A DNA stretch of 64,000 bases from Laetmonice hystrix (Eukaryota): contig OZ249440.1 of NCBI GenBank assembly GCA_965235115.1, positions 25,110,001-25,174,000 on the forward strand, in the 5' to 3' direction. Shown piece by piece: positions 4,339-27,500 of the stretch. The notes beneath the pieces are model-generated. The model did no database searches. It saw nothing but the letters and a program-made list of their open reading frames with translations, and was not told the DNA's origin. The translations under genes were made by a program, and so were the position numbers. The stretch's first letter is position 1. Every line of letters begins with the position of its first letter.

Positions 4339-4412
4339 GCCTACTCCACTGTGTTTGTAACTCAAACTTTCTCCTGCCTACTCCACTGTGTTTGTAACTC
4401 AAACTTTCTCCT
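4339..4412. repeat. Two tandem copies of a 37-bp unit directly upstream of the putative acceptor of the giant exon
   Basis: gcctactccactgtgtttgtaactcaaactttctcct occurs twice, followed by ccgtgtgtag|AGGCC (AG at 4421-4422). Confidence 0.85.
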
Positions 4413-4473
4413 CCGTGTGTAGAGGCCAGGCAAACTGTGATATCAATGTGGAGTTTCATTTGAACATTTCATA

Positions 4474-7400
4474 ATGGGAAACCAGTACGGAAAGGAGGGG
4501 GAAAATGGAGACGCCAGCAAGGAGAGTGGTCAGGTATATAACGACGCTGAAGGGTCAAGTGGTCAAGCCAGTGGTCAGTTGGCGGGAGTGGTCAGTGGGG
4601 TTGGATCTCCGGTTGGAATACCAGTGCGGCCCAGTCGTTTGGCCATATCGCCAGACGTTGACCTTCCTCACGGTGTGAACAATGTGAGGGGAGGCGGGGG
4701 TGTTTATAATAAGGTCAAGGGGTCCGTCTCCCCGGATCACCCGGCCACCTTACATGGCATGTCGGCCCTGGGCCGCTCCCCCGGACACGTGGCCTCCAGC
4801 TCGCCAAGCCTCGCTTCCAGCACCTCCAGCCTCGGTTCAGCATCCCTGCGGAGTAGTGGCAATATTCCCATTCAACCGAGAACCGTGCCAGGCCTGTCAC
4901 GCTCCAATGCCTCCATTCAGATCGTCTCCGCGACCAGTCACGGAGGTACTGTTGGCTTCTCGAAGGATTCACAAACAGGGAAACAAAGACATGAGGATAG
5001 TGGTAAATCAAATAAAAAACTTCCGAATAGTAAATTGTCAGGTGATCTCAAAGGGGAGCCACCTGGTGGTCGTCATTCACAACAAGCTGACAGGGGACAA
5101 ATTGGCAATGCTCTGGTTAGGGGTACTGTGGCCACTGCAACTACAGCAGTCCCGAGGACAGTGAATGTCAGACCTGGGGTGCCACCTGCTGGGCGACAGC
5201 CGCAGCAGGCGGCGGTACAGATGGCCAGAGGGGGCGTGGCCAGTCCCACAGACAACCACCCGTCATACGTCACTGACGGCAGACGACCCAGCACATCCAG
5301 TATCGGCTCAACGTCAACCAGACGGTCAAGTACGGCAAGTATCAGCTCCACCCGCACCACCCCCGGCCTCCACCGGCGCTACCCCCACTCCTCACCCGGC
5401 GGGCGCTCCAAGTCCGGCAGTATATCCTCCGACCATGCTGCCGCCGCCATTGCCGCCATCCTAGGCGATAAGGTGGACTCTAGGACAGGCACAGGGTATC
5501 GCTCAGTCAGCCAGTCACCTATCATCCAAGCCATCCGAAGAACCCCCTCCGAGGACAAAAAGGCCTTTTCAGTTCGAAGGTCAAGTGGTGAGTACGGGTC
5601 TGGGCCCTTCTACACGCCCCCTGGTGGAGAACGAGGCAGCAACACCAGTCTAGCCAGTGCTGGCCAGGGAGAAGCTGATCTAAGGAGTGCAGCTTCCATC
5701 CTGGCAGCCCGCAAAACGTCGCTAGAGCAGCAACGGTCAAACCCCAACCAGGGACATTTCGGAGCAAGAAAACTCTCCCTTGATCAGGCTAAGGCGAGCG
5801 CCATGGCAGCGAAATCTGTCAAATTTAGGAGTCCACAAGAAACACAACAGATTAAACAAAACACAAGGATTGACCCTAAGGTGCCAGGCAAGGAATCAGT
5901 CAAGAAGGAAACAACACAACCAGATAAACCAAGGGGCAAAACGTCAACTCTGCCTTCTTGGGTGAAGCCAGCTGAACAGGACGTCCAACAAACAAAGTAT
6001 ACAGCTAGGCCTAGAATTACGAGGGGATCTCAAGGAGCTTCGCAAGAACACGGCACCATTGGCAACAAAGGTACTTCAGAGAGTGAGATTCTCAAGGGAA
6101 GCCCCAAGAAAGCACCAACTTCTCATGATGCTCAACAGAGTGCTGCAGAATCGAAATCAGGTAATGTCCCAAGTTGGGTGAACCGCGCTGAGGCTCAGGC
6201 ACATGTCAGACTAAGAACATCAAAACCACAGGTTGTTTCAGGACATCCTGGACTGGAACAGGACCAGACAACAGCTGGCTTCAAGGATACTGAGCAACCG
6301 AGTAATGTCAGCAATCAGTCAAAGGTTACAGTTGGACCTCAGTCAAAACTATTCTCCAAAGGTCTGCCTCTGAGGGACACTGTACAGGGGATAAAGGGCA
6401 CAGAGGGTAAACCTGGATTTAAAGTTTCGACAGAACTTCCCAAACGTGGTTCTAAGGATTTATCAGAGAACATTGTAAAACGTGGTTCTAAGGAATTATC
6501 TGAGAACATTGTAAAACGTGGTTCTAAGGATTTATCAGAGAACATTGTAAAACGTGGTTCTAAGGAATTATCAGAGAACATTGTAAAACTTGGTTCTAAG
6601 GAATTATCAGAGAACATTGTAAAGCGTGGTTCTAAGGATTTATCAGCGGGTGTTGTAAAACGTGGTTCTAAGGATTTATCAGATGTCGGTATGAAACGTG
6701 GCTCGAAAGAATTATCAAATGTAGGCATGAATCGTGGCTCAAAAGAAATGACTGACTTTGAGGCATCGTCGCGGGGGAGGGAGAAGGATAAAGAGGATTC
6801 GGCAGAAATGCTGCAGAGAAGATGCCGTGCGCTTTCACCTGATTCGAGCTGGCTGAGGACGGATGAACCTGTAACCTTGCGAACTCACCGTCCTTTAATT
6901 AAACAAACCTGCCACCGTGCATCTCGAGACATCCCAGAACCTGAGAGTAAAACTTTGGAGCAAGGCCAGACGTTCACAATGCCAAGTCGATCGGGTACGA
7001 TTGAGGAGGCTAAGCCTGCAGGGGTTGTAACAGCAGCAAAATCTGCAGAGGTCAAGATATTGAACAGTAAAACGCCTGCAAAACCTGCGGAAGTGAAAGA
7101 AGCAATGCCTGCAAAGCCTGCACAAGAGGAGACGACAGTAGGTCCAAGACCAGCAGTAGCAACGACGCCAACAAGACCTGTAGTAAAGACAAGCGCCACT
7201 CCAGCAGTAATACCTAAAAGGGCAACACCTGCAAAACCTGCACAAGTGAAGCCAGCAATAGTGCCAGCACCAGCGGCAACACCTGCAAGACCTGCACAAG
7301 TGAAGCCAGCAATAGTGCCAGCACCAGCGGCAACATCTGCAAGACCTGCACAAGTGAAGCCAGCACCAACGGCAACACCTTCAAGACCTGCACAAGTGAA

Positions 7401-10400
7401 GCCAGCACCAGCAGCAACACCTTCAAGACCTGCACAAGTGAAGCCAGCACCAGCGGCAACACCTGCACAACTGAAGCCAGCAATAGTGCCAGCACCAGCG
7501 GCAACACCTGTAAAACGTTCACAAGTGAAGCCAGCAGTAGTGCCAGCACCATTGGCAACACCTTTAAAACCTGCACAATTGAAGCCAGCAGTAGTGACAA
7601 CACCTGTAAAACCTTCACAAGTAAAGCCAGCAGTAGTGCCAGAACCAGCGGCAACACCTTTAAAACTTGCACAATTGAAGCCAGCAGTAGTGCCAGCACC
7701 ATCAGGAACACCTTCAAAGCCTCCACAAGTGAAGCCAGCAGTAGTGGCAACACCTGTAAAAACTCCACAAGTGAAGCCAGCAGTAGTGCCAGCACCATTG
7801 GCAACACCTTTAAAACCTGCACAATTGAAGCCAGCAGTAGTGACAACACCTGTAAAACCTGCACAAGTGAAGCCAGCAGTAGTGCCAGCACCGGCAGCAA
7901 CACCTTCAAAGCCTGCACAAGTGAAGCCAGCAGTAGTGCTAGCACCAGCAGCAACACCTTCAAAGCCTGCACAAATGAAGCCAGCAGTAGTGTCAACACC
8001 ATTGGCAACACCTGTAAAACCTGCACAAATGAAGCCAGCAGTCGTCACAGCACCATCGTCAACACCTGCTAAACCTGCACAAGTGAAACCAGCTGTAGCT
8101 CCAACAACAGCAGCAACACCTGCAAAACCTGCACAGGTGAAGACAGGAGTAGTTCAAACACCAGCAGCATCACCACCTGCAAAACCTGCACAGGTGATCA
8201 CAGCAGCAGCTCCAACACCAGCAGAAGTTAAGACAGCAGAAGTTCCAACATCAGTAGCAAGTGCCGCAACGCCTGCTCAGGTGACGCCAACAGTAGGTCT
8301 TCAAACAGGAATACCTGCAAAGCCTGTAAAATTAATGGCATCAGCTTTTGAACCTGCGTCAATACAACAACCTGCAAAAGCGAGGGCCGTTGTAAAGCCT
8401 GCACCTGGGAAGCAACCTGTGAGTAAAGAATCCCTTTCAGAACCTGCTGTCGTTTTAGTAAAGACCCCGGTAGAAGTATCAGCTAAACCTGCACCAGCAA
8501 TATTAAGTTCCTCAGTATCTACAAAGCCTTTACAACAAAAACCTACGGGAGATCCTGCATCAGTATCCACACCTGGTAAGACTACACAAGACTGGTCGGT
8601 ATTAGGACCTGCACAGGGGACAAAACCTGCTCAGATAAAGAATGTTACAAGTTTGGCACAGAATGCAAAGCCTGAGCAAGGTAAGCCAGTTGCAGCACCA
8701 ACAAGACCTGCACAGATAAAGACTATTGTTAGTTCTACATCACAGGCAAAATCTGCCAAAGTAAGAACTACAGTAGCTCCTGCACCAACAACTCCTGGAA
8801 AAGCTACGGCATTGAAGTCTCATAGTCAACCTGCACAAGGCAGACCAGATGTAGGACCTGCATCTGGATATGTAGCACACCTTGCTCAAGTGACTACTAC
8901 ACTTCCAAATCTAAAGCCTGAGCAACAAATAGCAGAAGTGATATCCGTAAAACCTTCACATATAAGAAGGTTTCAATCTCAAGAATCAAGTGAGAATAAA
9001 ACAACAGATAAAACTGAAATCAAGGAAATAATTAAAAATGACGAGAAAGCTTCTGTTGCACAGGTGGTAAAATCTAGATTGGTCAGTGTGGAAGATAAAC
9101 GTCAGGAGACAGTGGGAGTAAAAATAGAAGCAGGGGTTGTTGCCAAAACTACAGCAGCTGACACTAAGCCTCATGAAAAACAGCAAGGAGAAACACCTGA
9201 GGCAGCACCCCAGAAGTCCATGGTCAAAGTTTCAGTAAACACTGAAGCGAAGGTTTCAGAAACGGTGGAGGTGAAAACGGTAGGAACGGTCTCAAATAAA
9301 CCTCAGGTTCCAGCAGATGTCAAATCTACAGCTGAGGTTGATGTGGCAATGTCTCCAGTAACAGCAGAAGTCAGAACTCCAAAAACAGATGTGGCAATGA
9401 CTCCAGTAACAGCAGAAGTCAGAACTCCAAAAACAGATGTGGCAATGACCCCAGTAACAGCAGAAGTCAGAACTCCAAAAACAGATGTGGCAGTGTCTCC
9501 AGTAACAGCAGAAGTCAGAACTCCAAAAACAGATGTGGCAATGACTCCAGTAACAGCAGAAGTCAGAACTCCAAAAACAGATGTGGCAATGACCCCAGTA
9601 ACAGCAGAAGTCATAACTCCAAAAACAGATGTGGCAAAGGCTCAAGTAACAGCAGAAGTCAGAAGTCTAAAAACAGATGTGGCAATGACCCCAGTAACAG
9701 CAGAAGTCATAACTCCAAAAACAGATGTGGCAAAGGCTCAAGTAACAGCAGAAGTCAGAAGTCTAAAAACAGATGTGGCAATGACCCCAGTAACAGCAGA
9801 AGTCAGAAGTCTAAAAACAGATGTGGCAATGACCCCAGTAACAGCAGAAGTCAGAACTCCAAAAACAGATGTGGCAATGGCCCCAGTAAAAGCAGAAGTC
9901 AGAACTCCAAAAACAGATGTGGCAATGACTCCAGTCACAGCAGAAGTCAGAACTCCAAAAACAGATGTGGCAATGACCCCAGTAACAGCAGAAGTCAGAA
10001 CTCCAAAAACAGATGTGGCAATGACTCCAGTAACAGCAGAAGTGGGAACTTCAAAAACAGATGTGGCAATGACTCCAGTAACATCAGAAGTGGGAACTCC
10101 AAAAACAGATGTGGCAATGACCCCAGTAACAGCAGAAGTCATAACTCCAAAAACAGATGTGGCAATGACTCCAGTAACAACAGAAGTCAGAACGGATGTG
10201 ACAAAAGCTTCAGTCAAGGCACCAGCTCCTGTACCAGCTGAGGTTAGAACTCTAGTCACAACTCAGGCAGGTCATCCAGTAACGGTAGAGGGAAAAACAC
10301 AAGTCACAGCAGAAGTCAGTTCTCGAATAACATCTGATGCAAAAACGGCAATAAAATATGAGAGCACACCAGCAACAGCAGGGGTCAAAACTTCACCAAC

Positions 10401-13400
10401 ATCAGAGGTAAAAACATCAGTGACAGTTGAAGCAAAAACTCCAATCGCAGCTGAATTGAAAAAGGTTGAAACAGCTGGCTCCAAACAGGAACCGGAAACT
10501 GCTCCATTGAAAACATCGACGCTTGAAGAGGTCAAAACTCCAATTACGACTGAGGCAAAATCTCCCGCACAACTTGCTGTCATAACTCCAGTACCAAAAC
10601 AAGTTATATCTGTGACATCAGACAACATCCAACATCAAGTAAATACAGAGAAGACTCCGATTATAGCTGAGGTAAAAACTCCTCTAGCAACAGAAGTTAA
10701 AACTCAACTTAAGGTCATAACTCCAGTACCAGAACAAGTTATATCTGTGACATCAGACACCACCCAACATCAAGTAAATACAGAGAAGACTCCGATTATA
10801 GCTGAGGTAAAAGACAAGCAGCTGTCAACAGAGCTGAGTATTCCAGTAGAAAAACAAACGTCGGAGATGATGGCCCATATCAAATCACCAGAGGCTGTGC
10901 AGTTGGAAACGGCAGACCGGGAAAGATTACCTGAAAACATGATGCACATTAAAGAGCAGGAGACTGGGGAAATGTCTGCAGGTACACGAGCTCAAGATAT
11001 GAGAGCGAATTTAGAGGAGCAGACGGTGGGAAGGGCCGATAAAATAGCGGTTGATGGGAGAGAGGCAGGTCGCGTGGTTGGACAGACTGTAGAGGCGGGG
11101 AAGATTGATGAGGCACAGTTACAACATCAGACTCACCCAGGAGAGTCTGAGGAAATCCGCACCGCAGAGGTACAAATTGTTGAAGGAAATAAGGTGAAAT
11201 CGACTGGGAAAGACATGCTGGGACGTATGGAAAATATGCAGGATAGAGAGCGACTAGTGAATGATGCCTGTGAGCAAGGATCCGCAATGCCAGTCGGTAC
11301 TGACAGTTCTATATCAGCAGCAGAAACTGTCAAGATGCCACAGGGAGTGGTACAAAGTGGAGTGGGAGACAAAACACAGGCGGAGTGTCAGGACAAAACA
11401 GGAGGTGTGGAATCGCATGAGAAAATAACGGAGGCGAAATCTGAGGCTCATGTTGCGCTGCCAACCACTTCAACAATGGTTGGGGACGGACTGGGTGTGT
11501 CAGACCCAGTGACTCAAGTAACAACGGTTGTTAAAACACCTGTTGAACAGGTAGTCTCAGGTTCTCCCGTACATGATCGCCAGGAGAGGGTAGACATCGC
11601 AGGGGGTACAAACCCTCCAACCCCAGTGTCACCCAACACCTCCACGGAGGACGCCGCCAAACATGGCTTCCCCAAGAGGTCATCCGTTATCAGGAGGTCG
11701 GTCGTAAAGCTTCGCGAGGTGTCCACAGGGGTGCGCACCTCTCGACGAGCCGTGAAGCGGCGGTCGTGTGATCTGGACGACGATCCAACATCATTTAGCG
11801 ATCCACGTGGATCCCAGGCGCAGGCCCCCGAGGTGCAGGCAGCCTTTACACCCACCACTGTCCAGGTGCAAACAATATTGGGGCGCGGTTTGAGTGTTGT
11901 GTCAGCAGACGTAAAAACAGCCTCTCCTGTTGGCGGTGGCGGTGGTGGTGCTGGTGGTGGTGGTGGTGCCCAGCCAGCCGGAGTACCGGCGGAGCCCGAG
12001 TCAGCGGGAGGACTAGAAAGTACTGGAAAAATGGGTGATGTCAGAGGGGTCGGGTCGGATTCAGCAGGAGCAGGCCCACAGCGGGAAGGGACGACCACAG
12101 TAGTAGAGCCAGCGGTGGTGGCAGCAACAGCAGAGATGGGGCAGGGATTGGCAACGGCTGGCAACGGGCAACTCAACACTGGCAACACTGGTGTAACGTT
12201 ATCTTCTGTGTACAAGACTGCAGGCGGGACTGGACGGACTGGCCAGACACAGGGTGTGGGGATATCAAGTCATACAGTACAGAAACATGGTAATGATACC
12301 CCCCAGAAAAACACCCCCTGCTCCGATAGGGTAGAGGGTGTCTCACCGGGTGGTAGACACGTGAGTCAGCCACTGACTGTCAACTCTACCCGGGGGAGTG
12401 TGTCTCCTGCTGCAGTCGGCCCACGGTTAGTTTTACCGGGAGAGGTAGCAAGTCAACGGCCAGTTACACCTCCAGCGTTGGTCCAGCCTGGCCTGGTGGT
12501 CAGTACACATGTACCTGCAGCGTCCAGCCCTCCAGCTGCAGTTATAGGACCCCCACAGCCAGGAGGGGTCGGGGTAGGGAAGCCAACCCTCAGGGGGGTC
12601 ATACAGGGACCCCCAGTGCCCGTCGTCGTCCTGAAGCCAATCCACCCGGCGCATACACCACAGGAAGCCGGAGGTAAACCTGAGGGAGGTCAAGAGGTCA
12701 ACCAAGACGCCGGCCTCACAACATCAGCCACACCAGTAGGGGATCAACCCAGCACAGTTGTAACCGAACCAGCTCCAGGACAGATGAACCGGTCACTGAT
12801 GGCCTCCATCGTTGGGGGCGGGGCCGCCGCCAGCGCTCCGTATTCACCAGGGTCAGCCGGGGTCAGGCCAGGGGTCGGCCCCATCTGGTCGAAGGCCACC
12901 GTCTCCACCCACACTCCCCATGGACCCCATAACCGGGAGCCGTACCCTGTCACAGCGGGTAAACAGATACAGGGTTCTGTGGATAAACACCTGAGTCAAG
13001 CTCGCGTGATCCACCATCAGATATTACCGGCACCATCCCAGCACCACCAGCCACAGTTACAGCAGGCAGTACCAGAGATCACTCCAGCTACCGCCCCATC
13101 TCAACAGTCACTGAGCCGGATCCACACGACTGTCAGCCCCGGTGGTCAGCGTCCTCCAGTAAGTGACCACTCCGCCATGGGGTCCCTCCAGGGTGTGGCC
13201 AGCCCACCGGTCAGTGATCCGGAGTCTCAGAGCACCACCGTTACTTCAATGGTCAGCAGTGAGGAGGACGCCGTCCAGGTGGTCCAGGTGGCGCCCACAG
13301 TGGTCAGTGGGTCGACGTCGGCTGGGGGTGGGCAGAGACGGCACCGTGTCCGACACATCACAAGGCAGGCGGTGTTCCCGGAGGAACAGTTCACAATGAC

Positions 13401-16400
13401 GCTACAGTCTCAGCAAACTCCTGGCGCTTCACAACATTTACAGTCAGAGATAGCGTCAGAAACACAACGCATGGCTCCAGTACAACAAGCCTGGGTTAGA
13501 CCACAACATCACACAGTGACACCTTCTTCAAGTCCAAGTCAGCAAGGTTTAACAGCACCACAGACTGCTGCTCCCGGGCAACAAATTAGTTCCATGTCAC
13601 AGCAGCCATCTGCAGGCTCCACTCAGCAGGTCCAGGCAGGTTCCACTCAGCAGGTCCAGGCTAAATCAGAACAGCAAATGCCATTCATTCAGAAACCTCC
13701 ACACCAGCTGCATGACCAGGATCATCAGCCAGGTGAACACCGCTCACACACAGGTGCACAGATGACTGCAGGATGGAGAGTGCTGCCTCCTCCCCCTCCA
13801 CCAGCCGCAAGTAACCAGACCGGTCCCCAGGCGACGCTCAGGTACAGTCCAGTGACGGCCCAGGTGAACCACCCTCCCGCCTCGCCCTCGCACACCCCCG
13901 CCGTCCCCTCGGTTCGCGTCACCTCGCCGGGTGATGGGCAAGGGGCCGGGGAGATCACCCTCCACGGCCCAGTGACGAGCAGAGTTGTGCCGCGGGCGCA
14001 GGTGGCCGTCCTCACCTCGTCGTGGGCCCCAGCACCCAGCGGGCTCAGCGTACGCTGCGACTCCGCCGACAGTGTGGGACTCTCCAGCCTCGAGTACACC
14101 AGCTCCACCGAGCCAGGCTCACTGGAGAGTCTGGTCACTGAGAACCTGAGGTATTCTTCCAATTCTCCGTGTGAGATTTTACCTATATCACCAAACCATG
14201 AAGGTAACGTTAAAGTTATTTCAAATACATCTTCGAGTGAGGAGAAAGAGACGTTTATTCCAAGTGAACCGAAACAAGTGAATGAAGTGAAAGTGATTCC
14301 AAGCGCTCAACTGAAGGAAGATACTGTGAACATTTCTGTTGGAGATAACGGTGAGGATCAAGTTATTATAACACCAGGTGAGAATCAAGAGAAAGTCATT
14401 CCAAGTGTGACTGTAGATATGACCACTACACCCAGCTCACCCAAGGTCGTCAAGTATAAGTCAACTGACCAGCAAACATGGATGGCCTACTCGGAATCTG
14501 AGGACAGTCTGTCAGGGTCACCGGGTACAGGCCAGGAAGTTACAGGTGTGTCATCAAGTGGGATGCTTGAACCAGAAGGTGATAAAAAGATGGCCCAGGC
14601 ACCAGGTGTGGTGACTGCGCAGGTAGCAGGACCACAGCCGGAGACTCCGGTCTCACCATTAGCCGCCGCTGGGAGTACCCCGGACCAAACCAGCCCGGAG
14701 AGTAACCAGATAGCATCTCCTCCTGTGTGTGAGACAAAGGTCAATCAGCATGGCACGGGGTCACAGCTCAAGGTCGAGGAAGAATATGGAGCAACGCAAA
14801 CAGTGGCAGATGTTAACACACCTGACGTTAGTTCAAGGACGGCTGTTACTGAAAGATTGTCCCAGGATGACACTCAACGGACAAGTCATGTGATGTCGAT
14901 ACAGGTGTCAAGCAAGGCTGTCCATCCAAATANNNNNNNNNNNNNNNNNNNNNNNNNNNNNNNNNNNNNNNNNNNNNNNNNNNNNNNNNNNNNNNNNNNN
15001 NNNNNNNNNNNNNNNNNNNNNNNNNNNNNNNNNNNNNNNNNNNNNNNNNNNNNNNNNNNNCAATCCCTCACACCAGTTGAATATGTAGGGCAAGGACCTG
15101 CAGGGGTCTCTGCTGAAACCAGACACCAGCACGCTCCCGCCGGCCTATCTAAACAAGTTATCAAAGAACACACTGTTTGTTCGCTTCCCGGAACTCAGGC
15201 CCGAGAAAGGGAGGGGAGGGTGCAACCCGACACCCCCAGACTCAACCAGGTAGTCACCGGTTCACATGACGCTGCCAGCAAAGTTCCACAGGAACAACTG
15301 AACGCATTCATAGGCGATGAAACAAATGAGGCTATGGCGAAGATAACGGTTACAGACATTGAGCCTAGTCAGGGTGCCAGACCTGAACAACCCCCAGGTA
15401 TAACCCCACCTAGCAAAGTTCACGGCCCCCAGAATGTTCCACAGCTGGACACAGGTGCACCCCCCGACCGGAGCCAGGGCGCCGAGGTGCGTCCCAGTCC
15501 TCTGACTGGGGGTAGAGGGGTACTGGAGGAGGCCAGCGCAGGGGGCGGGGGTGGAGGGGTGCGGATGGGGGCGGGCAGTGACATGAGAACGGAATCCGAG
15601 GCAATGACTGCAGCGCCTCCCAGCGATGGCAGTGGGATCTTACAAACAAAAATAACTGAGGCAGTAAATACCGAGCATGACACAGGGATGATACAGCCAC
15701 CTGAGGACCATGCTGTGAATCAGGCCGAGGTTTGGAGTAAACCCGGGACAAACTCTGAATGTGTCACAGTTATTACAACCCACAGTGATACAAACTCTGG
15801 AAGTCTGATAAATACACGCCAATCTCACGTTGTAGTGGGTGAAGCTGATATCAACCATTCCCCGACCCCCCAGGCTGGAGAACGTGACGTCACTCGAGAA
15901 CGTGACGTCACCGGAGAACGTGACGTCACCGGAGAACGTGACGTCACCAGAGAACGTGACGTCACCGGAGAACGTGACGTCACCGGAGAATCTGACGTCA
16001 CTGGAGAACGTGACGTCACTGGAGAACGTGACGTCACTGGAGAACGTGACGTCACCGGAGAACATGACGTCACCGGAGAACCTGACGTCACTGTCGCCCA
16101 ATCAGTGGAGCAGTATGATAGTAAAACACAAGAAGTGACTGTAAGCCAGACAGGAGCACCCCCTGGTGGCCAGGTTGTACAATCAGCAGTTTCTTCTCCA
16201 AGTGAAGACACTGCCAACTTTTCGGGGCCAGACGGGGTGACCGTGCAGACCGAGTCAGTCCTAGTTACAGCTCCCATTTCAGAAACTGCCTTAGAGCACA
16301 TTTCTAAGGAAATAATAGAAGAAAAAGACACCAAAACAGCAGAAAAGGACATTTCAGGACCAGAAACTAGGGTTGAAGGTGCAAACAGTGAAATAGAGGA

Positions 16401-17529
16401 AGCTACACGTGAAGTCAAAGGGGGCGAAGTTTCCGACATATCAAAGGGTGGTGAAACAATAGTGACTGAAACTGAAGGAACAGATAAAAAGGTTGATTCT
16501 TCTCTCCAAGAAAGTGATAAAAATAAAGTAATTGAATCAGAGCCAGGAAGTCATATTGAAGAAAACAAAAGCTCAGAGGCAGATGGTCAGACGGACATCG
16601 TTGAGAAAGAGAGTGTAGGAAATGATGCATGTAAAGCAGAATCAACTGGGCCAGAACCAGAGAAGGCTGAGGAGGAGGAGGAGGAGGAGGGGGAAGTGGA
16701 GGAGAAGGAGGAGGAGTATATCTGTGCCGCTGACGTCCAGACAGCGTTTAAAATCCGACCACGACCTGTCCGTACTCCGCCGTGGGTGCTGCAGGTCCCG
16801 CCCGTCAACATTGAGGAGATAATATCGTCCTCATCAGAAGAGGAGGAAGAGGAAGAGGAGATCTCAGAGAGTGAAGAGGATGAGGAGGTTGGCGCGGCCT
16901 GCAGTACGGCAGACATGGGTGTTGGTACCAGTGAGTTAGCAGCCGACACTGTGATCTACGAGGGCATGGAGCCAGGCACCACACTCTACAGCACCATCAC
17001 CGTGGAGACAGCTTCCACAGCCCCAACGGTGGAGGAGTTCCACCACTACCACCAGGCCTGGTGGACCGCCACCAAACGGTCCATCGGGGTCCAGTTCCCG
17101 GAGCGGGTCACTGTCGGCATCCACGTCTACCCGGCTCACATCGTCGGCTCACAGTGCCCGGAGAAATGTGACGTTGGCACGTGTGTGAATCTGGACAGGG
17201 AGGAGTCGGAGATGTCGGAGGATGAGGATTATGAGAGCGAGAGTAGTTGGGAGGAGTGGTGTGACGACGAGTGGTCGGATGGGAGTTCTGGGGAGTCTGA
17301 GTTAGGGGCCACAGGTTACACACGGCCTGGACACACACTGGGTGAACACACACTGGTCGGGCACACATCCAGGGCCGAGGAGGCCAGCAGGGGGGTGGTG
17401 AGAGAGAGAGCTCAGGCTCTCGGGGATGGAGGTCTCCCGGTACAACCAGTCCAGGACAAGGGTTGGACGGTAGACGTGACAGCCATGGGAGGCGGTGTAG
17501 TCAGGTCATCCAATTATGGCCACAATTGA
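4474..17529 (+). CDS. Giant single-exon ORF (4351 aa) for an intrinsically disordered, repeat-rich protein region starting MGNQYGK; probable variable N-terminal exon of the TACC locus or a stand-alone neighbour
   Basis: About 13 kb with no stop codon; the frame is conserved across a 128-N gap; the well-defined internal tandem repeats have units divisible by 3 (36, 48, 18 bp); Met-Gly start resembles vertebrate TACC2 long isoform (MGN...). The join to the constant TACC exons is not demonstrable. Confidence 0.8.
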   Translation: MGNQYGKEGENGDASKESGQVYNDAEGSSGQASGQLAGVVSGVGSPVGIPVRPSRLAISPDVDLPHGVNNVRGGGGVYNKVKGSVSPDHPATLHGMSALGRSPGHVASSSPSLASSTSSLGSASLRSSGNIPIQPRTVPGLSRSNASIQIVSATSHGGTVGFSKDSQTGKQRHEDSGKSNKKLPNSKLSGDLKGEPPGGRHSQQADRGQIGNALVRGTVATATTAVPRTVNVRPGVPPAGRQPQQAAVQMARGGVASPTDNHPSYVTDGRRPSTSSIGSTSTRRSSTASISSTRTTPGLHRRYPHSSPGGRSKSGSISSDHAAAAIAAILGDKVDSRTGTGYRSVSQSPIIQAIRRTPSEDKKAFSVRRSSGEYGSGPFYTPPGGERGSNTSLASAGQGEADLRSAASILAARKTSLEQQRSNPNQGHFGARKLSLDQAKASAMAAKSVKFRSPQETQQIKQNTRIDPKVPGKESVKKETTQPDKPRGKTSTLPSWVKPAEQDVQQTKYTARPRITRGSQGASQEHGTIGNKGTSESEILKGSPKKAPTSHDAQQSAAESKSGNVPSWVNRAEAQAHVRLRTSKPQVVSGHPGLEQDQTTAGFKDTEQPSNVSNQSKVTVGPQSKLFSKGLPLRDTVQGIKGTEGKPGFKVSTELPKRGSKDLSENIVKRGSKELSENIVKRGSKDLSENIVKRGSKELSENIVKLGSKELSENIVKRGSKDLSAGVVKRGSKDLSDVGMKRGSKELSNVGMNRGSKEMTDFEASSRGREKDKEDSAEMLQRRCRALSPDSSWLRTDEPVTLRTHRPLIKQTCHRASRDIPEPESKTLEQGQTFTMPSRSGTIEEAKPAGVVTAAKSAEVKILNSKTPAKPAEVKEAMPAKPAQEETTVGPRPAVATTPTRPVVKTSATPAVIPKRATPAKPAQVKPAIVPAPAATPARPAQVKPAIVPAPAATSARPAQVKPAPTATPSRPAQVKPAPAATPSRPAQVKPAPAATPAQLKPAIVPAPAATPVKRSQVKPAVVPAPLATPLKPAQLKPAVVTTPVKPSQVKPAVVPEPAATPLKLAQLKPAVVPAPSGTPSKPPQVKPAVVATPVKTPQVKPAVVPAPLATPLKPAQLKPAVVTTPVKPAQVKPAVVPAPAATPSKPAQVKPAVVLAPAATPSKPAQMKPAVVSTPLATPVKPAQMKPAVVTAPSSTPAKPAQVKPAVAPTTAATPAKPAQVKTGVVQTPAASPPAKPAQVITAAAPTPAEVKTAEVPTSVASAATPAQVTPTVGLQTGIPAKPVKLMASAFEPASIQQPAKARAVVKPAPGKQPVSKESLSEPAVVLVKTPVEVSAKPAPAILSSSVSTKPLQQKPTGDPASVSTPGKTTQDWSVLGPAQGTKPAQIKNVTSLAQNAKPEQGKPVAAPTRPAQIKTIVSSTSQAKSAKVRTTVAPAPTTPGKATALKSHSQPAQGRPDVGPASGYVAHLAQVTTTLPNLKPEQQIAEVISVKPSHIRRFQSQESSENKTTDKTEIKEIIKNDEKASVAQVVKSRLVSVEDKRQETVGVKIEAGVVAKTTAADTKPHEKQQGETPEAAPQKSMVKVSVNTEAKVSETVEVKTVGTVSNKPQVPADVKSTAEVDVAMSPVTAEVRTPKTDVAMTPVTAEVRTPKTDVAMTPVTAEVRTPKTDVAVSPVTAEVRTPKTDVAMTPVTAEVRTPKTDVAMTPVTAEVITPKTDVAKAQVTAEVRSLKTDVAMTPVTAEVITPKTDVAKAQVTAEVRSLKTDVAMTPVTAEVRSLKTDVAMTPVTAEVRTPKTDVAMAPVKAEVRTPKTDVAMTPVTAEVRTPKTDVAMTPVTAEVRTPKTDVAMTPVTAEVGTSKTDVAMTPVTSEVGTPKTDVAMTPVTAEVITPKTDVAMTPVTTEVRTDVTKASVKAPAPVPAEVRTLVTTQAGHPVTVEGKTQVTAEVSSRITSDAKTAIKYESTPATAGVKTSPTSEVKTSVTVEAKTPIAAELKKVETAGSKQEPETAPLKTSTLEEVKTPITTEAKSPAQLAVITPVPKQVISVTSDNIQHQVNTEKTPIIAEVKTPLATEVKTQLKVITPVPEQVISVTSDTTQHQVNTEKTPIIAEVKDKQLSTELSIPVEKQTSEMMAHIKSPEAVQLETADRERLPENMMHIKEQETGEMSAGTRAQDMRANLEEQTVGRADKIAVDGREAGRVVGQTVEAGKIDEAQLQHQTHPGESEEIRTAEVQIVEGNKVKSTGKDMLGRMENMQDRERLVNDACEQGSAMPVGTDSSISAAETVKMPQGVVQSGVGDKTQAECQDKTGGVESHEKITEAKSEAHVALPTTSTMVGDGLGVSDPVTQVTTVVKTPVEQVVSGSPVHDRQERVDIAGGTNPPTPVSPNTSTEDAAKHGFPKRSSVIRRSVVKLREVSTGVRTSRRAVKRRSCDLDDDPTSFSDPRGSQAQAPEVQAAFTPTTVQVQTILGRGLSVVSADVKTASPVGGGGGGAGGGGGAQPAGVPAEPESAGGLESTGKMGDVRGVGSDSAGAGPQREGTTTVVEPAVVAATAEMGQGLATAGNGQLNTGNTGVTLSSVYKTAGGTGRTGQTQGVGISSHTVQKHGNDTPQKNTPCSDRVEGVSPGGRHVSQPLTVNSTRGSVSPAAVGPRLVLPGEVASQRPVTPPALVQPGLVVSTHVPAASSPPAAVIGPPQPGGVGVGKPTLRGVIQGPPVPVVVLKPIHPAHTPQEAGGKPEGGQEVNQDAGLTTSATPVGDQPSTVVTEPAPGQMNRSLMASIVGGGAAASAPYSPGSAGVRPGVGPIWSKATVSTHTPHGPHNREPYPVTAGKQIQGSVDKHLSQARVIHHQILPAPSQHHQPQLQQAVPEITPATAPSQQSLSRIHTTVSPGGQRPPVSDHSAMGSLQGVASPPVSDPESQSTTVTSMVSSEEDAVQVVQVAPTVVSGSTSAGGGQRRHRVRHITRQAVFPEEQFTMTLQSQQTPGASQHLQSEIASETQRMAPVQQAWVRPQHHTVTPSSSPSQQGLTAPQTAAPGQQISSMSQQPSAGSTQQVQAGSTQQVQAKSEQQMPFIQKPPHQLHDQDHQPGEHRSHTGAQMTAGWRVLPPPPPPAASNQTGPQATLRYSPVTAQVNHPPASPSHTPAVPSVRVTSPGDGQGAGEITLHGPVTSRVVPRAQVAVLTSSWAPAPSGLSVRCDSADSVGLSSLEYTSSTEPGSLESLVTENLRYSSNSPCEILPISPNHEGNVKVISNTSSSEEKETFIPSEPKQVNEVKVIPSAQLKEDTVNISVGDNGEDQVIITPGENQEKVIPSVTVDMTTTPSSPKVVKYKSTDQQTWMAYSESEDSLSGSPGTGQEVTGVSSSGMLEPEGDKKMAQAPGVVTAQVAGPQPETPVSPLAAAGSTPDQTSPESNQIASPPVCETKVNQHGTGSQLKVEEEYGATQTVADVNTPDVSSRTAVTERLSQDDTQRTSHVMSIQVSSKAVHPNXXXXXXXXXXXXXXXXXXXXXXXXXXXXXXXXXXXXXXXXXXXQSLTPVEYVGQGPAGVSAETRHQHAPAGLSKQVIKEHTVCSLPGTQAREREGRVQPDTPRLNQVVTGSHDAASKVPQEQLNAFIGDETNEAMAKITVTDIEPSQGARPEQPPGITPPSKVHGPQNVPQLDTGAPPDRSQGAEVRPSPLTGGRGVLEEASAGGGGGGVRMGAGSDMRTESEAMTAAPPSDGSGILQTKITEAVNTEHDTGMIQPPEDHAVNQAEVWSKPGTNSECVTVITTHSDTNSGSLINTRQSHVVVGEADINHSPTPQAGERDVTRERDVTGERDVTGERDVTRERDVTGERDVTGESDVTGERDVTGERDVTGERDVTGEHDVTGEPDVTVAQSVEQYDSKTQEVTVSQTGAPPGGQVVQSAVSSPSEDTANFSGPDGVTVQTESVLVTAPISETALEHISKEIIEEKDTKTAEKDISGPETRVEGANSEIEEATREVKGGEVSDISKGGETIVTETEGTDKKVDSSLQESDKNKVIESEPGSHIEENKSSEADGQTDIVEKESVGNDACKAESTGPEPEKAEEEEEEEGEVEEKEEEYICAADVQTAFKIRPRPVRTPPWVLQVPPVNIEEIISSSSEEEEEEEEISESEEDEEVGAACSTADMGVGTSELAADTVIYEGMEPGTTLYSTITVETASTAPTVEEFHHYHQAWWTATKRSIGVQFPERVTVGIHVYPAHIVGSQCPEKCDVGTCVNLDREESEMSEDEDYESESSWEEWCDDEWSDGSSGESELGATGYTRPGHTLGEHTLVGHTSRAEEASRGVVRERAQALGDGGLPVQPVQDKGWTVDVTAMGGGVVRSSNYGHN
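6442..6750 (+). repeat. Coding 36-bp tandem repeat (KRGSK[D/E]LSENIV), 9 units
   Basis: aaacgtggttctaagga(t/a)ttatcagagaacattgta repeated in frame. Confidence 0.95.
7222..8150 (+). repeat. Coding Pro/Ala/Thr/Lys repeats (ATPAKPAQVKPAVVPAP-type)
   Basis: Degenerate in-frame tandem units such as gcaacacctgcaaaacctgcacaagtgaagccagca. Confidence 0.9.
9337..10200 (+). repeat. Coding 48-bp tandem repeat (MTPVTAEVRTPKTDVA), about 18 units
   Basis: atgactccagtaacagcagaagtcagaactccaaaaacagatgtggca repeated in frame. Confidence 0.95.
14933..15060. other. Assembly gap (128 N) inside the giant ORF
   Basis: Run of N characters. Confidence 1.
15879..16092 (+). repeat. Coding 18-bp tandem repeat (ERDVTG) x12; every unit contains the palindrome TGACGTCA
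   Basis: gaacgtgacgtcaccgga units; TGACGTCA starts at 15885 and recurs every 18 nt to 16083. Confidence 0.95.
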
Positions 17530-17908
17530 AACTAGCAATATGTTATCTCGCAAACACTGGCCAAAGTAACATTACAAAAATTCTAAGGAGGAAGGGTGGG
17601 GGCGTATGATAATATCGCACTTTTGTGTATGTATATTTTCGTTGCGAACGTAATCGTAAAAAAATCTTATTTATGTTGTTTACATGTGACAAGTTAATGT
17701 GATGCTAGTCCTTACTGATACGTACCGATTTATGACACCTTTGTCTGCCAGAATAATTAGTCACAATTAGATTACTTATAATGACCATCCAGTTGGTAGG
17801 TCACCCGCTTTGTATTCATTCCTCATACCTTCAGTTACAAACATATTCACAGCAGTTACCAAATTAACTACGCAGTACCAGGAAAGGGCACATTCCCTGT
17901 GACCCGAC

Positions 17909-17934
17909 TGACCTTATGACCTCTCACAAGGTCA
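17909..17934. promoter_or_regulatory. Cluster of nuclear-receptor half-sites (DR2 plus everted repeat)
   Basis: TGACCT-ta-TGACCT-6nt-AGGTCA; sequence match only. Confidence 0.3.
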
Positions 17935-18739
17935 CCTTGTCACGTCTGTTGTGGCATGTGCCAAAACACCAGTTCATGTAATGAAATTTCATGATCGTGT
18001 TTCGGTCTGTAAGTAGTATATAAAAACAGGGGCACTAACCGGGAACATTAGTGTCGGTATCAGCCAATAAGTTACACGTAATAACCTCAGCTGATCAGTT
18101 ACACGTAATAACCTTGGAGCTTGGTCAAGGGGTGATCAGTGAGGCCGTTTCGGATGACCGTTTGGTGACCCCCCCCCCCCTTTTTTTTTGGGTCAAGAAA
18201 GAACAGCTCTCCTTGTAACGTCAGTATCAAAGTGATCTTAGAGAGGTGTTTATATTTAGATTCAGCCATGGAAAGAAAAACTTCTCTGATTTGCAAGCTG
18301 AGCTGATTTACAAGCTGATGTCTGAAGCCCACCCAGTCAGAGGTACGGTTTATAGCATTCCTGTCGGTATGTCTGGATATAGTGACTGGGCTGTGGGAGT
18401 GGTATGTTAGCAGATAGACCTCAGATGAACTTGATGGGAGCGGAGAGCCTGTAACTTTGGTATGTGGGGTAGTTTGGACCGGTGCCAGGTAGGCTGATGG
18501 TTACCCCCACCTATGTACCCCCACAGCCCTACATTTACTGTGACCCAGGCTGCCGTTATATATCGAGTCTGTACCTCACACCAGATCCCAGCGCCGTATC
18601 ATTGGTCCTGAGGGCCACACGCTGGGAACGAGCTATGATGGTGATGATGAATCAAGGCGCTCAGACAGATAGCGTGGATGATGGGTGGACGGGCAGGTGC
18701 GGCATCTCCTACCAGGATGCTGAGGCTGAGAGTGCCCAC

Positions 18740-18753
18740 ATAACCATGGCAAC
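18740..18753 (-). promoter_or_regulatory. RFX X-box-like site upstream of the MGQEG exon
   Basis: Reverse complement reads GTTGCCATGGTTAT. Confidence 0.45.
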
Positions 18754-25268: not shown

Positions 25269-27500
25269 ATGGGCAACGTGGAGGGTGGAGAAACAGACCC
25301 CCAGGGTCCTGTGGGAGCGGAGGGGTTGATCCCTTCACCACAGGGTGGTGGGCCGCTGACGTCGACAGGTGGGCAAGGTACGGGAGCCAGCGGGGAGGAG
25401 GCAGCCGCCGCCGCTATCCAGGTGGGACACACTGAGGATGACATGAAGTCGTCAGGGGATGAATTTGAGGACGCCGCTGATAGCTTTGTCTCAGGTCAGC
25501 CGTCAGAGGTCACTCCAGGGGTCAAAGGTCAAGTTGTAGGAGTAAAGTCGTCAGATGACGGGGAGGGTAGGACGGTTGGAGCGGAGCAAACAACTGCGAC
25601 ATCTGGGAAGGAAGGAGTTACCGTGAGTGACATGAACACATTAGGTGACACGCCACAGGCTGCAGTGGTCCGTGATAAACCTGGTGATGGTACAGAAACC
25701 GTCAAACCAAACACCATGGTGGGAAATGATCACACAGGTATGACCTATCAATCACCGGACGCAGCCCACCAATCAACTCAAGCTGCTGCTGGTGCTGCCA
25801 AGGCAACCCCCCAGGAAATCAGCCGATTGGAAACACCATCTGATGTGGAAGGTAACATTACGTCTGATGTTAGGGGTGAGCCAGGGGTTGGCGGCAGTGA
25901 TCACTGTATGGGTGATGTAGGGACTGGCGGGGAGGAGACCAAACAACCACACACTGGAGATAGCCAGGACGATGGTAAACAGGCAGCTCCGGTAGGTTCG
26001 GTTTCTCCAGGAGAGGAGACAAGAGCTACTACTGCTGCGCAGGTCGGTGCCAGTCATAACAACCCTGGAGGAGGTACTGGAGGTGGGGTAGGGTGTGAAC
26101 CGGCTACCCCCCACCAAACACCGACACCGCCGACTCACAGCGAACCACCCAACTGCGAACCACCCAACCAAGGGGCCCGGGATGACGGTGATCCTGAGGC
26201 TGGCTTTGTGTTTGGTGAACCTACTGGAACCGTAGTAGTTCCTGATAGTCCATCTCCAGTGGACAACTCTCAGTCCGAGTCTGAACCAGGTCTGTCGGAG
26301 GGTGGTCAGTCCGCCACCATGGTGCAGGAGTCGGTGACGTCAGGTAAGGCTGACCACAACCAGAACGTTGTGTCTGAGGTCACCGGCCCCCAGACCACCC
26401 CGGCCGTCCACAAGGAACCGCCGGCAGAGATCACCAATAGACCGTCCCCCGATACCAGAGGACGACGCCATGAGGACGCCCCACTCGCTAGGGGGTCATA
26501 CAACCTGGACTTCCTGGACCACATGGGGGACAACTTCAATCCCTTTGCCAGCAAACCAAAGGTGGCCACCACCCCGCCCCAGGGGCGCGGGTACCTGTCT
26601 GGTGACAAACCACCCGCCCTGTCTGACAGCTTTACAACGGAGCCCCAGCCTAGGGTCGTCCAGGCCTCCTGTCTGGAGTATAATCAAAATACAGTTGAGG
26701 TTTCAGGAGTTGAGGGAAAAGTGAAAAACCTAGGATCTGAAACCGAAAAAAATGATCAAGAGGAAGCAATCTTGCCTAAGTCCGCTGTGAGACTTGACAG
26801 TAAGGATGCTGGAGAAATAGGTTTTCAATCAGTGCCCCCTGGTGGTGATGGGGTATCACCAGCAGATGGCGCTGTCTCAGACACGGCACGAACACCGAAC
26901 TCTGCCCACGTGTCTGAATCCGTCTCACCGAGTCAAAACGACCGTGTCGATCAAAGTGAGGAGGCGACAAATCTCTGCGGATCTGACAGGGAGCAAATTG
27001 AAAAACAGCCAGCCCGGGGCAGTCCGGCGGAGCGGAGTGACAGAGGTCGTGACTTGGCGGGTCATCCGACAACTGATAGAGGATTACCTGGAGAAAATGA
27101 CAGTACACATGAACGTGTTGAGGAGAATGCACATGAACGTGTTGAGGAGAATGTATTGGGAGTACGTGATGGTGGCGGGAAGAAGGATGTCCCTGCCTCC
27201 ACGGAGCAGGGCCTGCAGGAGGATGGAGATGGGGAGACTCCTGTCAGTGCCTCATCACAGGGAGGGCGTCCTACTAATGGGGAGCCATCCAGGGTGGGCG
27301 CTGGGGGTGATGACGCCCAGAATGAAGGTACCAGGGAGGATGTCTCCAGGGGTGAGCAGGAGTTACCTGGAGGAGAACGTGTCCCCAGGGGTGAGCAGGA
27401 GTTACCTGGGGGAGAACGTGTCCCCAGGGATGACCAGGAGTTACCTGGGGGAGAAGGTGGAGAGAGGCAGGTAGATCTCCGCGGGGAAACACCCACCCAG
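25269..27500 (+). CDS. TACC: TACC variable exon starting MGNVEGG (744 codons) with its own SDP-type motif, ending in a phase-0 donor
   Basis: Motif ARGSYNLDFLDHMGDNFNPFASKPKVATTPP (26484-26579) resembles the TACC SDP repeat; donor CAG|GTACGT at 27500/27501 is in phase with the acceptor at 39962; acceptor tcattgtctccgccccag| at 25251. The frame is also open upstream to 24954 (in-frame ATG at 24984). Confidence 0.8.

What the first reader, a model, noticed from the sequence alone, without database searches (positions are those of the whole stretch)
4474..17529. A 13-kb uninterrupted exon encoding about 4350 aa of disordered, modular repeat protein
Seen: no stop in about 13 kb, the same frame on both sides of the N gap, and successive blocks (Ser/Arg-rich head, KRGS repeats, PAT/K repeats, 16-aa TP repeats, Gln-rich, acidic tail). 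No globular domain is visible. No strong donor is found at the 3' end; the best phase-0 GTAAG donor I noticed is ACT|GTAAGC at 16140/16141. Inference: either an ankyrin/titin-style giant exon of TACC, or a separate giant protein that ends at 17529 and keeps its distinctive acidic/motif tail.
Basis: partly seen in the sequence, partly recalled or inferred. Interest (0 to 1): 0.7.

Follow-up and report, generated by a model that had tools for sequence, protein, structure and literature searches.

The report
Giant orphan coding exon heading TACC locus
A 13-kb open reading frame in an annelid genome is a real coding exon with its own Met-Gly start that encodes about 4,300 residues of disordered, repeat-rich protein with no detectable relatives; it lies upstream of the animal's only TACC gene, and I could not settle whether it is spliced to that gene.

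Summary
The open frame 4474-17529 (+) is real: it has no stop in 4,351 codons, while the other five frames carry 4-48 stops per 334 codons. Position-1 G is enriched throughout. Allelic differences in its last 2.4 kb are mostly synonymous (8 of 13, P=0.02).

An in-frame stop lies 33 nt upstream. The exon therefore starts translation itself, at a well-placed ATG (MGNQYGK, a myristoylation-type start).

The product is basic at the N end and acidic at the C end. It is poor in aromatic residues, built of in-frame tandem repeats, and has no Pfam domain, no confident fold and no homologue.

The host is an annelid, judged from mitochondrial gene order. TACC exons lie downstream on the same strand. Two further Met-Gly exons lie in between.

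The 3' end is unresolved. Probable-RNA contigs from the same sample run unspliced through the best donor (17397/8) and reappear past the stop. This favours a stand-alone protein ending at 17529 (about 50%). In-phase donor candidates leave splicing to TACC open (about 37%).

The 128-N gap is in frame by coordinates only.

The parts
4339..4422 (+). Two perfect 37-nt copies carrying a TAAC branch-point-like motif and a CTTTCTCCT pyrimidine tract, ending in gtgtag. This is an acceptor-like site, with the exon starting at 4423.
   Evidence: read from sequence; usage not shown
4438..4440 (+). In-frame TGA upstream of the start. It excludes in-frame read-in from an upstream exon joined at 4423.
4446..4463 (+). 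Five-codon upstream ORF (MWSFI*) in another frame, ending 10 nt before the main ATG.
   Evidence: read from sequence
4474..17529 (+). Giant ORF 'V1': 4,351 codons (4,308 read and 43 hidden in the gap), from the ATG (ttcataATGG, A at -3, G at +4) to the TGA at 17527-17529.
4474..4494 (+). MGNQYGK start. It fits the N-myristoylation pattern G-{EDRKHPFYW}-x(2)-[STAGCN]-{P}.
   Evidence: pattern matched by reading, modification not tested
4474..6441 (+). Ser/Arg-rich basic head with many RxxS/RRxS sites (for example RSVSQSP, VRRSSG, ARKTSL, ARKLSL).
6442..6747 (+). 36-nt repeats encoding KRGSK(D/E)LSENIV, about 9 units.
7221..8222 (+). Pro/Ala/Val/Lys repeats (PAQVKPAVVPAPAATP...) with periods 42/54/150 nt. 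This is the most basic segment, at +12 net charge per 100 aa.
9340..10193 (+). 48-nt repeats x17.8, 92% alike, encoding DVAMTPVTAEVRTPKT.
14933..15060 (.). 128-N gap. It is in frame by coordinates only and was not read.
15877..16091 (+). 18-nt repeats x12 encoding GERDVT.
16474..17526 (+). Strongly acidic tail (-10 to -21 net charge per 100 aa) with Glu/Ser runs and a Trp-acidic cluster (SSWEEWCDDEWSD). Predicted disordered.
17395..17403 (+). Donor candidate GTG|GTGAGA, phase 0. It would fit exon C0. Contig 27 of run X4 crosses it unspliced.
17502..17510 (+). Weak donor candidate CAG|GTCATC, phase 2. It would fit exon C4. Contig 27 of run X4 stops matching at 17505, and the GC content drops here.
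17530..18090 (+). Single-copy, AT-richer stretch after the stop. Run X4 contigs cover 17742-18090 at depths like those on the ORF tail, so this may be a 3' UTR. No AATAAA or ATTAAA is present.
19510..21654 (+). Context: second Met-Gly ORF 'V2' (MGQEGSK). Composition breaks at about 21400, where donor candidates lie at 21399 (phase 2) and 21403 (phase 0).
25269..27500 (+). Context: third Met-Gly ORF 'V3' (MGNVEGG). It carries a copy of the TACC-type GSYxLDF...NFNPFA motif and ends at a strong donor, CAG|GTACGT (27501, phase 0).
39962..40059 (+). Context: candidate 98-nt constant exon 'C0' (ttttag|GTGACC...AAAAC|GTAAGT), phase 0 in and phase 2 out.
41234..43921 (+). Context: TACC exon 'C4', phase 2 in and phase 2 out. 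Its boundaries and the GSYxFDFDSFDENTNPF...DPFKP block are conserved in another annelid (P0108 / L019).

Best explanation
V1 (4474-17529) is a genuine protein-coding giant exon. It carries its own start codon and, most likely, its own stop. It would then produce a stand-alone orphan protein of about 4,350 residues that is disordered throughout.

The transcript would come from the 5' end of the annelid's single TACC locus. It could be a neighbouring gene derived from the locus, or an alternative terminal-exon transcript of it.

Inferred mode of action:
- The Met-Gly start is N-myristoylated. Together with the basic N-terminal third (+3 to +12 net charge per 100 aa) it holds the protein on acidic membrane leaflets, as in MARCKS-type myristoyl-electrostatic switches.
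- The RxxS sites and the roughly nine KRGS repeat units are basophilic-kinase sites that could release this anchor.
- The Pro/Ala/Val/Lys and Thr/Pro repeat blocks act as a long flexible spacer whose length changes by in-frame unequal crossing-over.
- The acidic, Ser/Glu- and Trp-rich tail is the docking end.

Shown here: the ORF, the start context, the repeats, the composition, the lack of a domain or homologue, and some purifying selection in the tail.

Inferred only: the myristoylation, the membrane binding, the kinase control, the partners, and the position of the 3' end.
For: Coding:
- 0 stops in 4,351 codons against 4-48 per 334 codons in the five other frames. G at codon position 1 is 0.30-0.49 in every 1-kb block.
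- All repeat periods are divisible by 3.
- Of 13 listed allelic differences in 15061-17529, 8 are synonymous. The expected fraction is 0.31, giving binomial P=0.021.
- No indel lies in the ORF, but four lie in 18352-18913.

Own start:
- In-frame TGA at 4438-4440, then ATG at 4474 with A at -3 and G at +4.

Own end:
- GC stays at 0.58-0.68 through the 17398 donor candidate and falls to 0.27-0.40 only at 17505-17560. In V2 and V3 the fall sits at their donor candidates.
- X4 is the one run whose contigs total 58 Mb rather than about 520-600 Mb, with patchy depths of 3-32. Notes by other agents on this genome say RNA from the same specimen exists.
- X4 lies on 16472-17505 and crosses 17397/8 colinearly at depth 12. 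It reappears at 17742-18090 at depths 14-29, then 18342-18596 at depth 3.2, then nothing in 18823-19020. It shows no joint.
- 17535-18600 is single copy in the genome.

Disorder and orphan status:
- No Pfam family. W+F+Y+C make up 2.1% of residues. AlphaFold2 pLDDT is 37 on the tail.
- No homologue was found for the whole protein, the head or the tail. No paralogue of the head or tail exists in the genome.
Against: - X4 is not recorded as RNA, and its data are contigs. Contigs cannot show transcript ends and they drop rare spliced forms.
- X4 has no contig on 15061-16446 or on 17506-17741.
- Its contig 27 stops matching exactly at 17505, with 3 unmatched letters. That is the position of a phase-2 CAG|GT that would be in frame with C4.
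- There is no AATAAA or ATTAAA within 2 kb after the stop.
- A phase-0 GTG|GTGAGA lies 132 nt before the stop, where I estimate about a 4% chance of one by accident. It matches the phase of candidate exon C0.
- V3 shares the Met-Gly start type, carries a TACC motif and has a strong phase-0 donor.
- The selection signal rests on only 13 sites from one individual.
- The gap could hide a stop or a frameshift.
Confidence: 0.5

Rival explanations
1. V1 is one of three alternative Met-Gly first coding exons (V1, V2, V3) of the TACC gene. It would be spliced near its 3' end, either 17397/8 to C0 or 17504/5 to C4. The result would be a myristoylated TACC isoform of about 5,600 or more residues, in which the giant disordered arm links a membrane to the microtubule-regulating TACC coiled coil.
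For: - V1 is on the same strand as, and 22-24 kb upstream of, C0 and C4. TACC_C exons lie further downstream.
- Three neighbouring long ORFs start with ATG GGN, with A at -3 (MGNQYGK, MGQEGSK, MGNVEGG). I estimate the chance of this at about 1e-3.
- V3 carries a copy of the C4 motif (E=9e-7) and a strong phase-0 donor.
- The best near-end donor candidates of V1, V2 and V3 are all phase 0, as the C0 acceptor requires. The C0 donor and the C4 acceptor are both phase 2.
- The C4 boundaries are conserved in a relative.
- Run X4's contig 27 ends at 17505, a phase-2 CAG|GT.
- Vertebrate TACC2 has long and short mRNAs that differ by about 5.5 kb (PMC5658375).
Against: - No joint was seen.
- X4 crosses 17397/8 without a break and covers single-copy sequence past the stop at exon-like depth.
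- The composition change-point is not at 17398.
- 17504/5 is a poor donor (GTCATC; score 3.5 against 8-9 for C0, C4 and V3).
- V1 shares no TACC motif and has no similarity to V2, V3 or C4 beyond the first few residues.
- C0 came from a search designed to find such an exon.
Confidence: 0.37
2. The frame is not one ORF. The gap would hide a stop, a frameshift or a misjoin, leaving a coding piece of about 3,490 codons (4474-14932) and a separate or decaying piece of 822 codons (15061-17529).
For: - The gap length is only an estimate, and agreement of the frames has a 1 in 3 chance by accident.
- DNA contigs reach only 17-43 letters into the gap from the right side.
Against: - Both flanks are open right up to the gap, in one frame only.
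- The right piece still shows an excess of synonymous differences and coding-type composition.
- The right piece has no start codon context of its own at the gap edge.
Confidence: 0.08
3. The frame is open but not functional. It would be a young, repeat-driven expansion or a recently dead gene that has not yet acquired stops.
For: - There is no homologue anywhere.
- Repeat copies differ equally at all codon positions.
- The neighbouring V2 shows 4 synonymous and 9 non-synonymous differences, which looks neutral.
Against: - About 10 kb of the ORF is non-repetitive and still has no stop, where about 4% of codons would be stops by composition.
- Synonymous differences are in excess in the tail.
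- There are no indels within the ORF stretch examined.
- The start context is intact.
Confidence: 0.05

Closest known systems
Vertebrate TACC2 long isoform (large alternatively used N-terminal exon; 9.7-kb against 4.2/3.8-kb mRNAs, PMC5658375)
   Same: A very large, low-complexity coding block lies upstream of the conserved motif block and the TACC coiled-coil exons, in a locus with several alternative 5' ends.
   Different: V1 is more than twice as long and carries its own Met-Gly start and a stop. It has no sequence similarity, and its splicing to TACC is not shown. The motif match between C4 and human TACC1/2 is from my memory and was not tested.
Variable-first-exon arrays (clustered protocadherins, UGT1A)
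   Same: Large tandem exons each begin with their own start codon and lie upstream of shared exons. The phases of the candidate donors are compatible.
   Different: There are only three exons, and they are not alike beyond about 10 residues. Each has an acceptor-like site upstream of its ATG. No junctions or separate promoters were shown, and V1 may end at its own stop.
Giant-exon disordered proteins (AHNAK, giant ankyrin-B/G exons, titin PEVK, Futsch/MAP1B)
   Same: A single exon of many kb encodes tandem-repeat, Pro/Lys/Val/Thr-rich disordered polypeptide. This comparison is from general knowledge.
   Different: There is no homology and no flanking folded domains (no PDZ, ankyrin or Ig). V1 is an orphan in searches of 1.84 and 5.8 billion proteins.
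Myristoylated disordered membrane scaffolds (MARCKS, BASP1, AKAP12/gravin alpha)
   Same: They share a Met-Gly start that fits the myristoylation pattern, a basic stretch with basophilic-kinase Ser sites, and a lack of folded domains.
   Different: V1 is 10-40 times longer. Myristoylation is only predicted, and no effector-domain homology was found.
Giant alternative last exon in this genome's CIN85/CD2AP gene (scan note s1-310946)
   Same: It is in the same animal and involves a multi-kb exon encoding a long disordered tail that is used as a terminal exon.
   Different: That exon is spliced onto upstream coding exons, whereas V1 begins translation itself. I did not check that note.

Membership tests
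TACC protein (isoform of the TACC gene) | C-terminal TACC_C coiled coil (PF05010) in the same polypeptide | tested here: inconclusive
   TACC_C exons exist only at window-equivalent 81211-83267, on the same strand. No transcript or junction links them to V1.
TACC protein (isoform of the TACC gene) | Conserved pre-coiled-coil motifs (GSYxFDxD...NPF/DPF block; SLYxKFDPL Aurora-A site) within the sequence | tested here: not met
   V1 has no NPF or DPF and no BLASTP similarity to C4 or V3. The motifs lie in C4, in V3 and in an exon at window-equivalent 66486.
TACC protein (isoform of the TACC gene) | A used splice donor at the exon's 3' end, in phase with downstream TACC exons | tested here: inconclusive
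   Candidates are 17397/8 (phase 0, to C0) and 17504/5 (phase 2, to C4). An X4 contig crosses 17397/8 unspliced and another stops at 17505.
Variable-first-exon array | Several tandem exons, each with its own start codon | tested here: met
   V1 at 4474, V2 at 19510 and V3 at 25269 all start ATG GGN with A at -3. No further such ORF lies within 100 kb upstream.
Variable-first-exon array | Each variable exon spliced to the same constant exon | not testable with these tools
   This needs RNA junction reads. The single read-laying run showed no joints.
Variable-first-exon array | Variable exons are paralogous to each other | tested here: not met
   There are no significant pairwise BLASTP hits among V1, V2 and V3. 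No motif is shared in the 1.2 kb upstream of each.
N-myristoylated protein | Met-Gly start matching G-{EDRKHPFYW}-x(2)-[STAGCN]-{P} | tested here: met
   G-N-Q-Y-G-K, read.
N-myristoylated protein | Myristate actually attached | not testable with these tools
   This needs metabolic labelling or mass spectrometry.
Giant-exon intrinsically disordered repeat protein | Single uninterrupted coding exon of many kb | tested here: inconclusive
   The frame is open over 13,056 nt, but 128 N lie inside it.
Giant-exon intrinsically disordered repeat protein | No folded domain, low aromatic content, tandem repeats | tested here: met

The most novel reading that the evidence does not exclude
The annelid TACC locus is organised like a protocadherin cluster. 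Three giant or large Met-Gly first exons would each give a myristoylated, membrane-anchored TACC isoform. V1 would add a disordered tether of about 4,300 residues (micrometre-scale contour length) between the membrane and the microtubule-polymerase-recruiting coiled coil.
Probability: 0.3. Interest if true: 0.6.

Novelty: new variant of a known kind. Interest (0 to 1): 0.4.

Why it matters
Giant exons that encode disordered tethers are known from a few vertebrate and fly cytoskeletal genes, and their origin is poorly understood. This one is a young, lineage-specific example in a lophotrochozoan, with a myristoylation-type start, at the head of the only TACC gene.

If V1 is joined to TACC, it would be a new way of placing a microtubule regulator on membranes, and it would parallel the vertebrate TACC2 long form.

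If V1 stands alone, it is an orphan protein of 4,350 residues that gene predictors and homology-based annotation would mislabel or merge with TACC.

In either case the locus shows a giant coding exon growing by in-frame repeat expansion while staying open.

Tried and rejected
Homology searches (all blank or noise):
- Whole ORF, 100 words, candidate lengths 2,393-7,614 aa: no hit.
- Head, residues 1-640: no hit.
- Tail, 822 aa against 1.84 billion representatives: 107 hits, all on the GERDVT repeat. The best hit, P0001, is a Tudor protein with an unrelated repeat.
- ESM Atlas on the tail: no usable hit.
- Own genome: no paralogue of the head or the tail.
- Rfam on the window: nothing.

RNA evidence:
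- The run search returned four runs from one sample, none recorded as RNA.
- My single read-laying run (15061-21000) showed no joints. I therefore could not examine the 5' end, C0 or C4.

Readings I rejected or could not use:
- The donor at 16140/1 as the exon end. It scores 5.4, 463 open codons follow it, and an X4 contig lies on 16472-16646.
- A shared promoter motif upstream of V1, V2 and V3. Only chance 10-mers are shared.
- Codon-position bias among repeat copies. There is none, so the copies are young.
- Comparison with the relative's contig L019. Only the C4 motif aligns, and nothing aligns upstream of it.
- Literature and PDB checks of the GSY...NPF motif found nothing, so its link to vertebrate TACC1/2 rests on my memory.
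- The minus-strand 838-aa frame at window-equivalent 67385-69898 has no Pfam family and is open in all three minus frames, so it is a repeat.
Full report
**What is there.** The ORF listing finds a single ORF at 4474..17529 on the + strand, 4,351 codons. My own translation confirms it. The previous in-frame stop is at 4438-4440 and the only N run is at 14933-15060.

In 13 consecutive 1,002-nt blocks the frame has 0 stops. The other two + frames and the three - frames have 4-48 stops each. T is only 15-19% of the strand, but by the ORF's own composition about 4% of codons would still be stops. An open run of about 4,300 codons cannot be chance.

G at codon position 1 is 0.30-0.49 in every block, the usual coding signature. 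All tandem arrays have periods divisible by three (36, 42/54/150, 48, 24, 18 and 3).

**The gap.** Each flank has exactly one open frame: 0 stops against 27-61 in the other frames over 2 kb. With 128 N the two open frames are the same frame. The gap length is only an estimate, so this agreement has a 1 in 3 chance of arising by accident. The hidden letters could contain a stop. DNA contigs reach only 17-43 letters into it from the right. Continuity is likely but unproven.

**Selection.** Runs X1-X3 are DNA-like contigs of one sample and show alternative alleles. Of the 13 listed differences inside 15061-17529, 8 are synonymous and 5 are not. With the observed transition bias the expected synonymous fraction is 0.31, giving P(8 or more of 13)=0.021. 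No indel lies in the ORF stretch, but four lie in 18352-18913.

This is modest evidence from one individual, but it points to purifying selection on the tail. By contrast, copies within the 48-, 36- and 18-nt arrays differ equally at all codon positions. The arrays are therefore young and turn over by in-frame unequal exchange.

**The protein.**
- There are 4,308 read residues. Val, Thr, Ala, Ser and Pro are each about 10%, and W+F+Y+C make up 2.1%.
- Net charge is +3 to +12 per 100 aa over the first 1,400 residues or so, about 0 in the middle, and -7 to -21 over the last 750.
- Pfam finds nothing in V1 or in the other long ORFs of the window.
- AlphaFold2 on the last 309 residues gives mean pLDDT 37.
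- The head carries many RxxS sites. The KRGSK(D/E)LSENIV units repeat a basophilic-kinase site about nine times.
- The tail has Glu/Ser runs and a Trp-acidic cluster.

**Start.** The sequence upstream reads TAAC...CTTTCTCCTCCGTGTGTAG|AGG at 4422/3. This is acceptor-like, and the 37-nt unit that carries the branch point and pyrimidine tract is duplicated at 4339-4412. Then come the in-frame TGA (4438-4440), a 5-codon uORF (4446-4463) and ttcataATGG at 4474.

V1 therefore cannot be an internal coding exon read in from upstream. It is the first coding exon and is probably preceded by a non-coding leader exon. MGNQYGK fits the N-myristoylation pattern.

**Organism and locus.** The window is C5:25110001-25174000 of a 627-Mb, 35-contig genome. 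Contig C35 is a 16.8-kb mitochondrial genome with all genes on one strand. Its gene order is cox1-N-cox2-D-Y-cox3-Q-nad6-cob-W-atp6-R-H-nad5-F-E-P-T-nad4L-nad4-C-(G)-M-rrnS-V-rrnL, the conserved annelid arrangement as I know it.

TACC_C (PF05010) matches above its cut-off at only one locus. That locus is on the same strand, at window-equivalent 81211-83267. An exon encoding ...RQSLYVKFDPL..., the conserved Aurora-A site region of TACCs, lies at 66486.

Exon C4 (41234-43921) carries GSYQFDFDSFDENTNPF...DFDPFKP. This block is 61% identical in a protein from another annelid's assembly (P0108). In that contig the exon has the same acceptor phase and the same EPKK..K|GTAAG end. From memory, this block corresponds to the ...YxFDxDKxDDPNFNPF...DPFK... 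region of vertebrate TACC1/2. I could not verify that here.

A 98-nt candidate exon C0 (39962-40059) has good splice signals. It is open in the frame that C4 imposes: phase 0 in, phase 2 out.

**Neighbouring Met-Gly exons.** Two more long + ORFs lie between V1 and C0:
- V2 starts at 19510 with MGQEGSK.
- V3 starts at 25269 with MGNVEGG.

Both have A at -3 and an acceptor-like CAG|GTCAC 17-34 nt upstream. V3 contains a copy of the C4 motif (E=9e-7) and ends at a strong CAG|GTACGT donor (27501, phase 0), where GC content drops.

V1 has no significant similarity to V2, V3 or C4. No further such ORF lies within 100 kb upstream. Its mention of Met-Gly starts led me to look for the V3 start.

**Where does V1 end?** There are three candidates.

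(a) Stop at 17527-9.
- GC stays at 0.58-0.68 until about 17500 and falls to 0.27-0.40 just past the stop.
- Run X4 has 58 Mb of contigs and uneven depths of 3-32, unlike the 520-600 Mb and even depths of X1-X3. Other agents' notes say that RNA of the same specimen exists for this genome (not checked by me).
- X4 has contigs on 16472-16646, 16893-17222, 17343-17505, 17742-17892, 17903-18090 and 18342-18596, none in 18823-19020, and then 19021-19812. It has no joint.
- 17535-18600 is single copy, so the contigs past the stop come from this locus at exon-like depth.

(b) GTG|GTGAGA at 17397/8.
- It is phase 0, the best donor-like site in the last 1.5 kb, and fits C0.
- I estimate about a 4% chance that a site of this strength and phase lies in the last 150 nt by accident.
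- However, X4 contig 27 crosses it without a break, and the composition does not change there.

(c) CAG|GTCATC at 17504/5.
- It is phase 2 and fits C4 directly. It lies at the composition change-point, and X4 contig 27 stops matching there with 3 unmatched letters.
- However, it is a poor donor, and holes of 120-250 nt are common in X4 coverage.

No AATAAA or ATTAAA follows the stop within 2 kb. Contigs cannot show transcript ends and they drop rare forms. I put (a) at about 50% and (b) or (c) together at about 37%. A mixed situation, with a terminal-exon form plus a minor spliced form, is compatible with all the evidence.

I reject it as the normal end.

**Homology.** None was found:
- The whole ORF against proteins of 2,393-7,614 aa.
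- The head, residues 1-640.
- The tail against 1.84 billion representatives, where only repeat-driven noise appeared.
- The ESM Atlas.
- The animal's own genome.

Outside the motif block, even C4 does not align with the relative. Disordered parts of this locus therefore evolve beyond recognition between the annelids available. A blank here does not show that V1 is new to this species.

**Verdict.** This is a real, probably expressed, giant first coding exon for an orphan disordered repeat protein with a predicted myristoyl anchor, at the 5' end of the TACC locus. It is a new variant of a known kind: giant-exon disordered tethers, and TACC loci with large alternative N-terminal blocks.

Noticed in passing
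window 19510-21654: Second Met-Gly ORF (MGQEGSK..., 714 aa). GC drops and T rises at about 21400, where donor candidates lie. The hydrophobic 'tail' after that point looks like translated intron. Allelic differences are 4 synonymous and 9 non-synonymous, with all 7 in 20681-20866 non-synonymous.
   Followed up: partly
window 24939-27575: Third long ORF. It has an internal Met-Gly start at 25269 just after an acceptor-like CAG|GTCACC, a copy of the TACC GSYxLDF...NFNPFA motif, and a strong CAG|GTACGT donor at 27501. A further 104 open codons lie upstream of the acceptor and are unexplained.
   Followed up: partly
window 39962-40059 and 41234-43921: Candidate 98-nt exon C0 and the large TACC exon C4. 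The phases chain as 0 to 2 to 2. The boundaries and motif block of C4 are conserved in another annelid (P0108, locus L019).
   Followed up: partly
L009:2486 (window-equivalent 66486): An exon encodes ...TPLSRQSLYVKFDPLVKGASP..., the conserved TACC Aurora-A phosphosite region. It lies about 15 kb upstream of the TACC_C exons.
   Followed up: no
window 36263-38090 and 60758-63090; window-equivalent -11225 to -10036 (L011:8776-9965) and 83667-84576 (L012:9667-10000 and L010:1-576): Minisatellite-like tandem arrays that are open in several or all six frames. They are not coding and recur around this locus.
   Followed up: no
window 4446-4463: Five-codon upstream ORF (MWSFI*) ending 10 nt before the V1 start codon.
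   Followed up: no
window 16447-17436: DNA runs X2 and X3 have no contig here, although X1 does. The X4 contig on 16893-17222 differs at 6 of 330 letters. The acidic tail may be unusually polymorphic between haplotypes, or the contigs may have been filtered out.
   Followed up: no
G000:C35 (L015, L016): The mitochondrial genome is 16,826 bp with the annelid gene order. About 2.1 kb of roughly 512-bp tandem repeats lie at its start, in the putative control region. tRNA-Gly sits between Cys and Met.
   Followed up: partly
G000:C12:19359076-19359657 (L007): A weak TACC_C-like coiled-coil hit lies inside another open frame of 2,616 codons. This genome holds other giant open frames.
   Followed up: no
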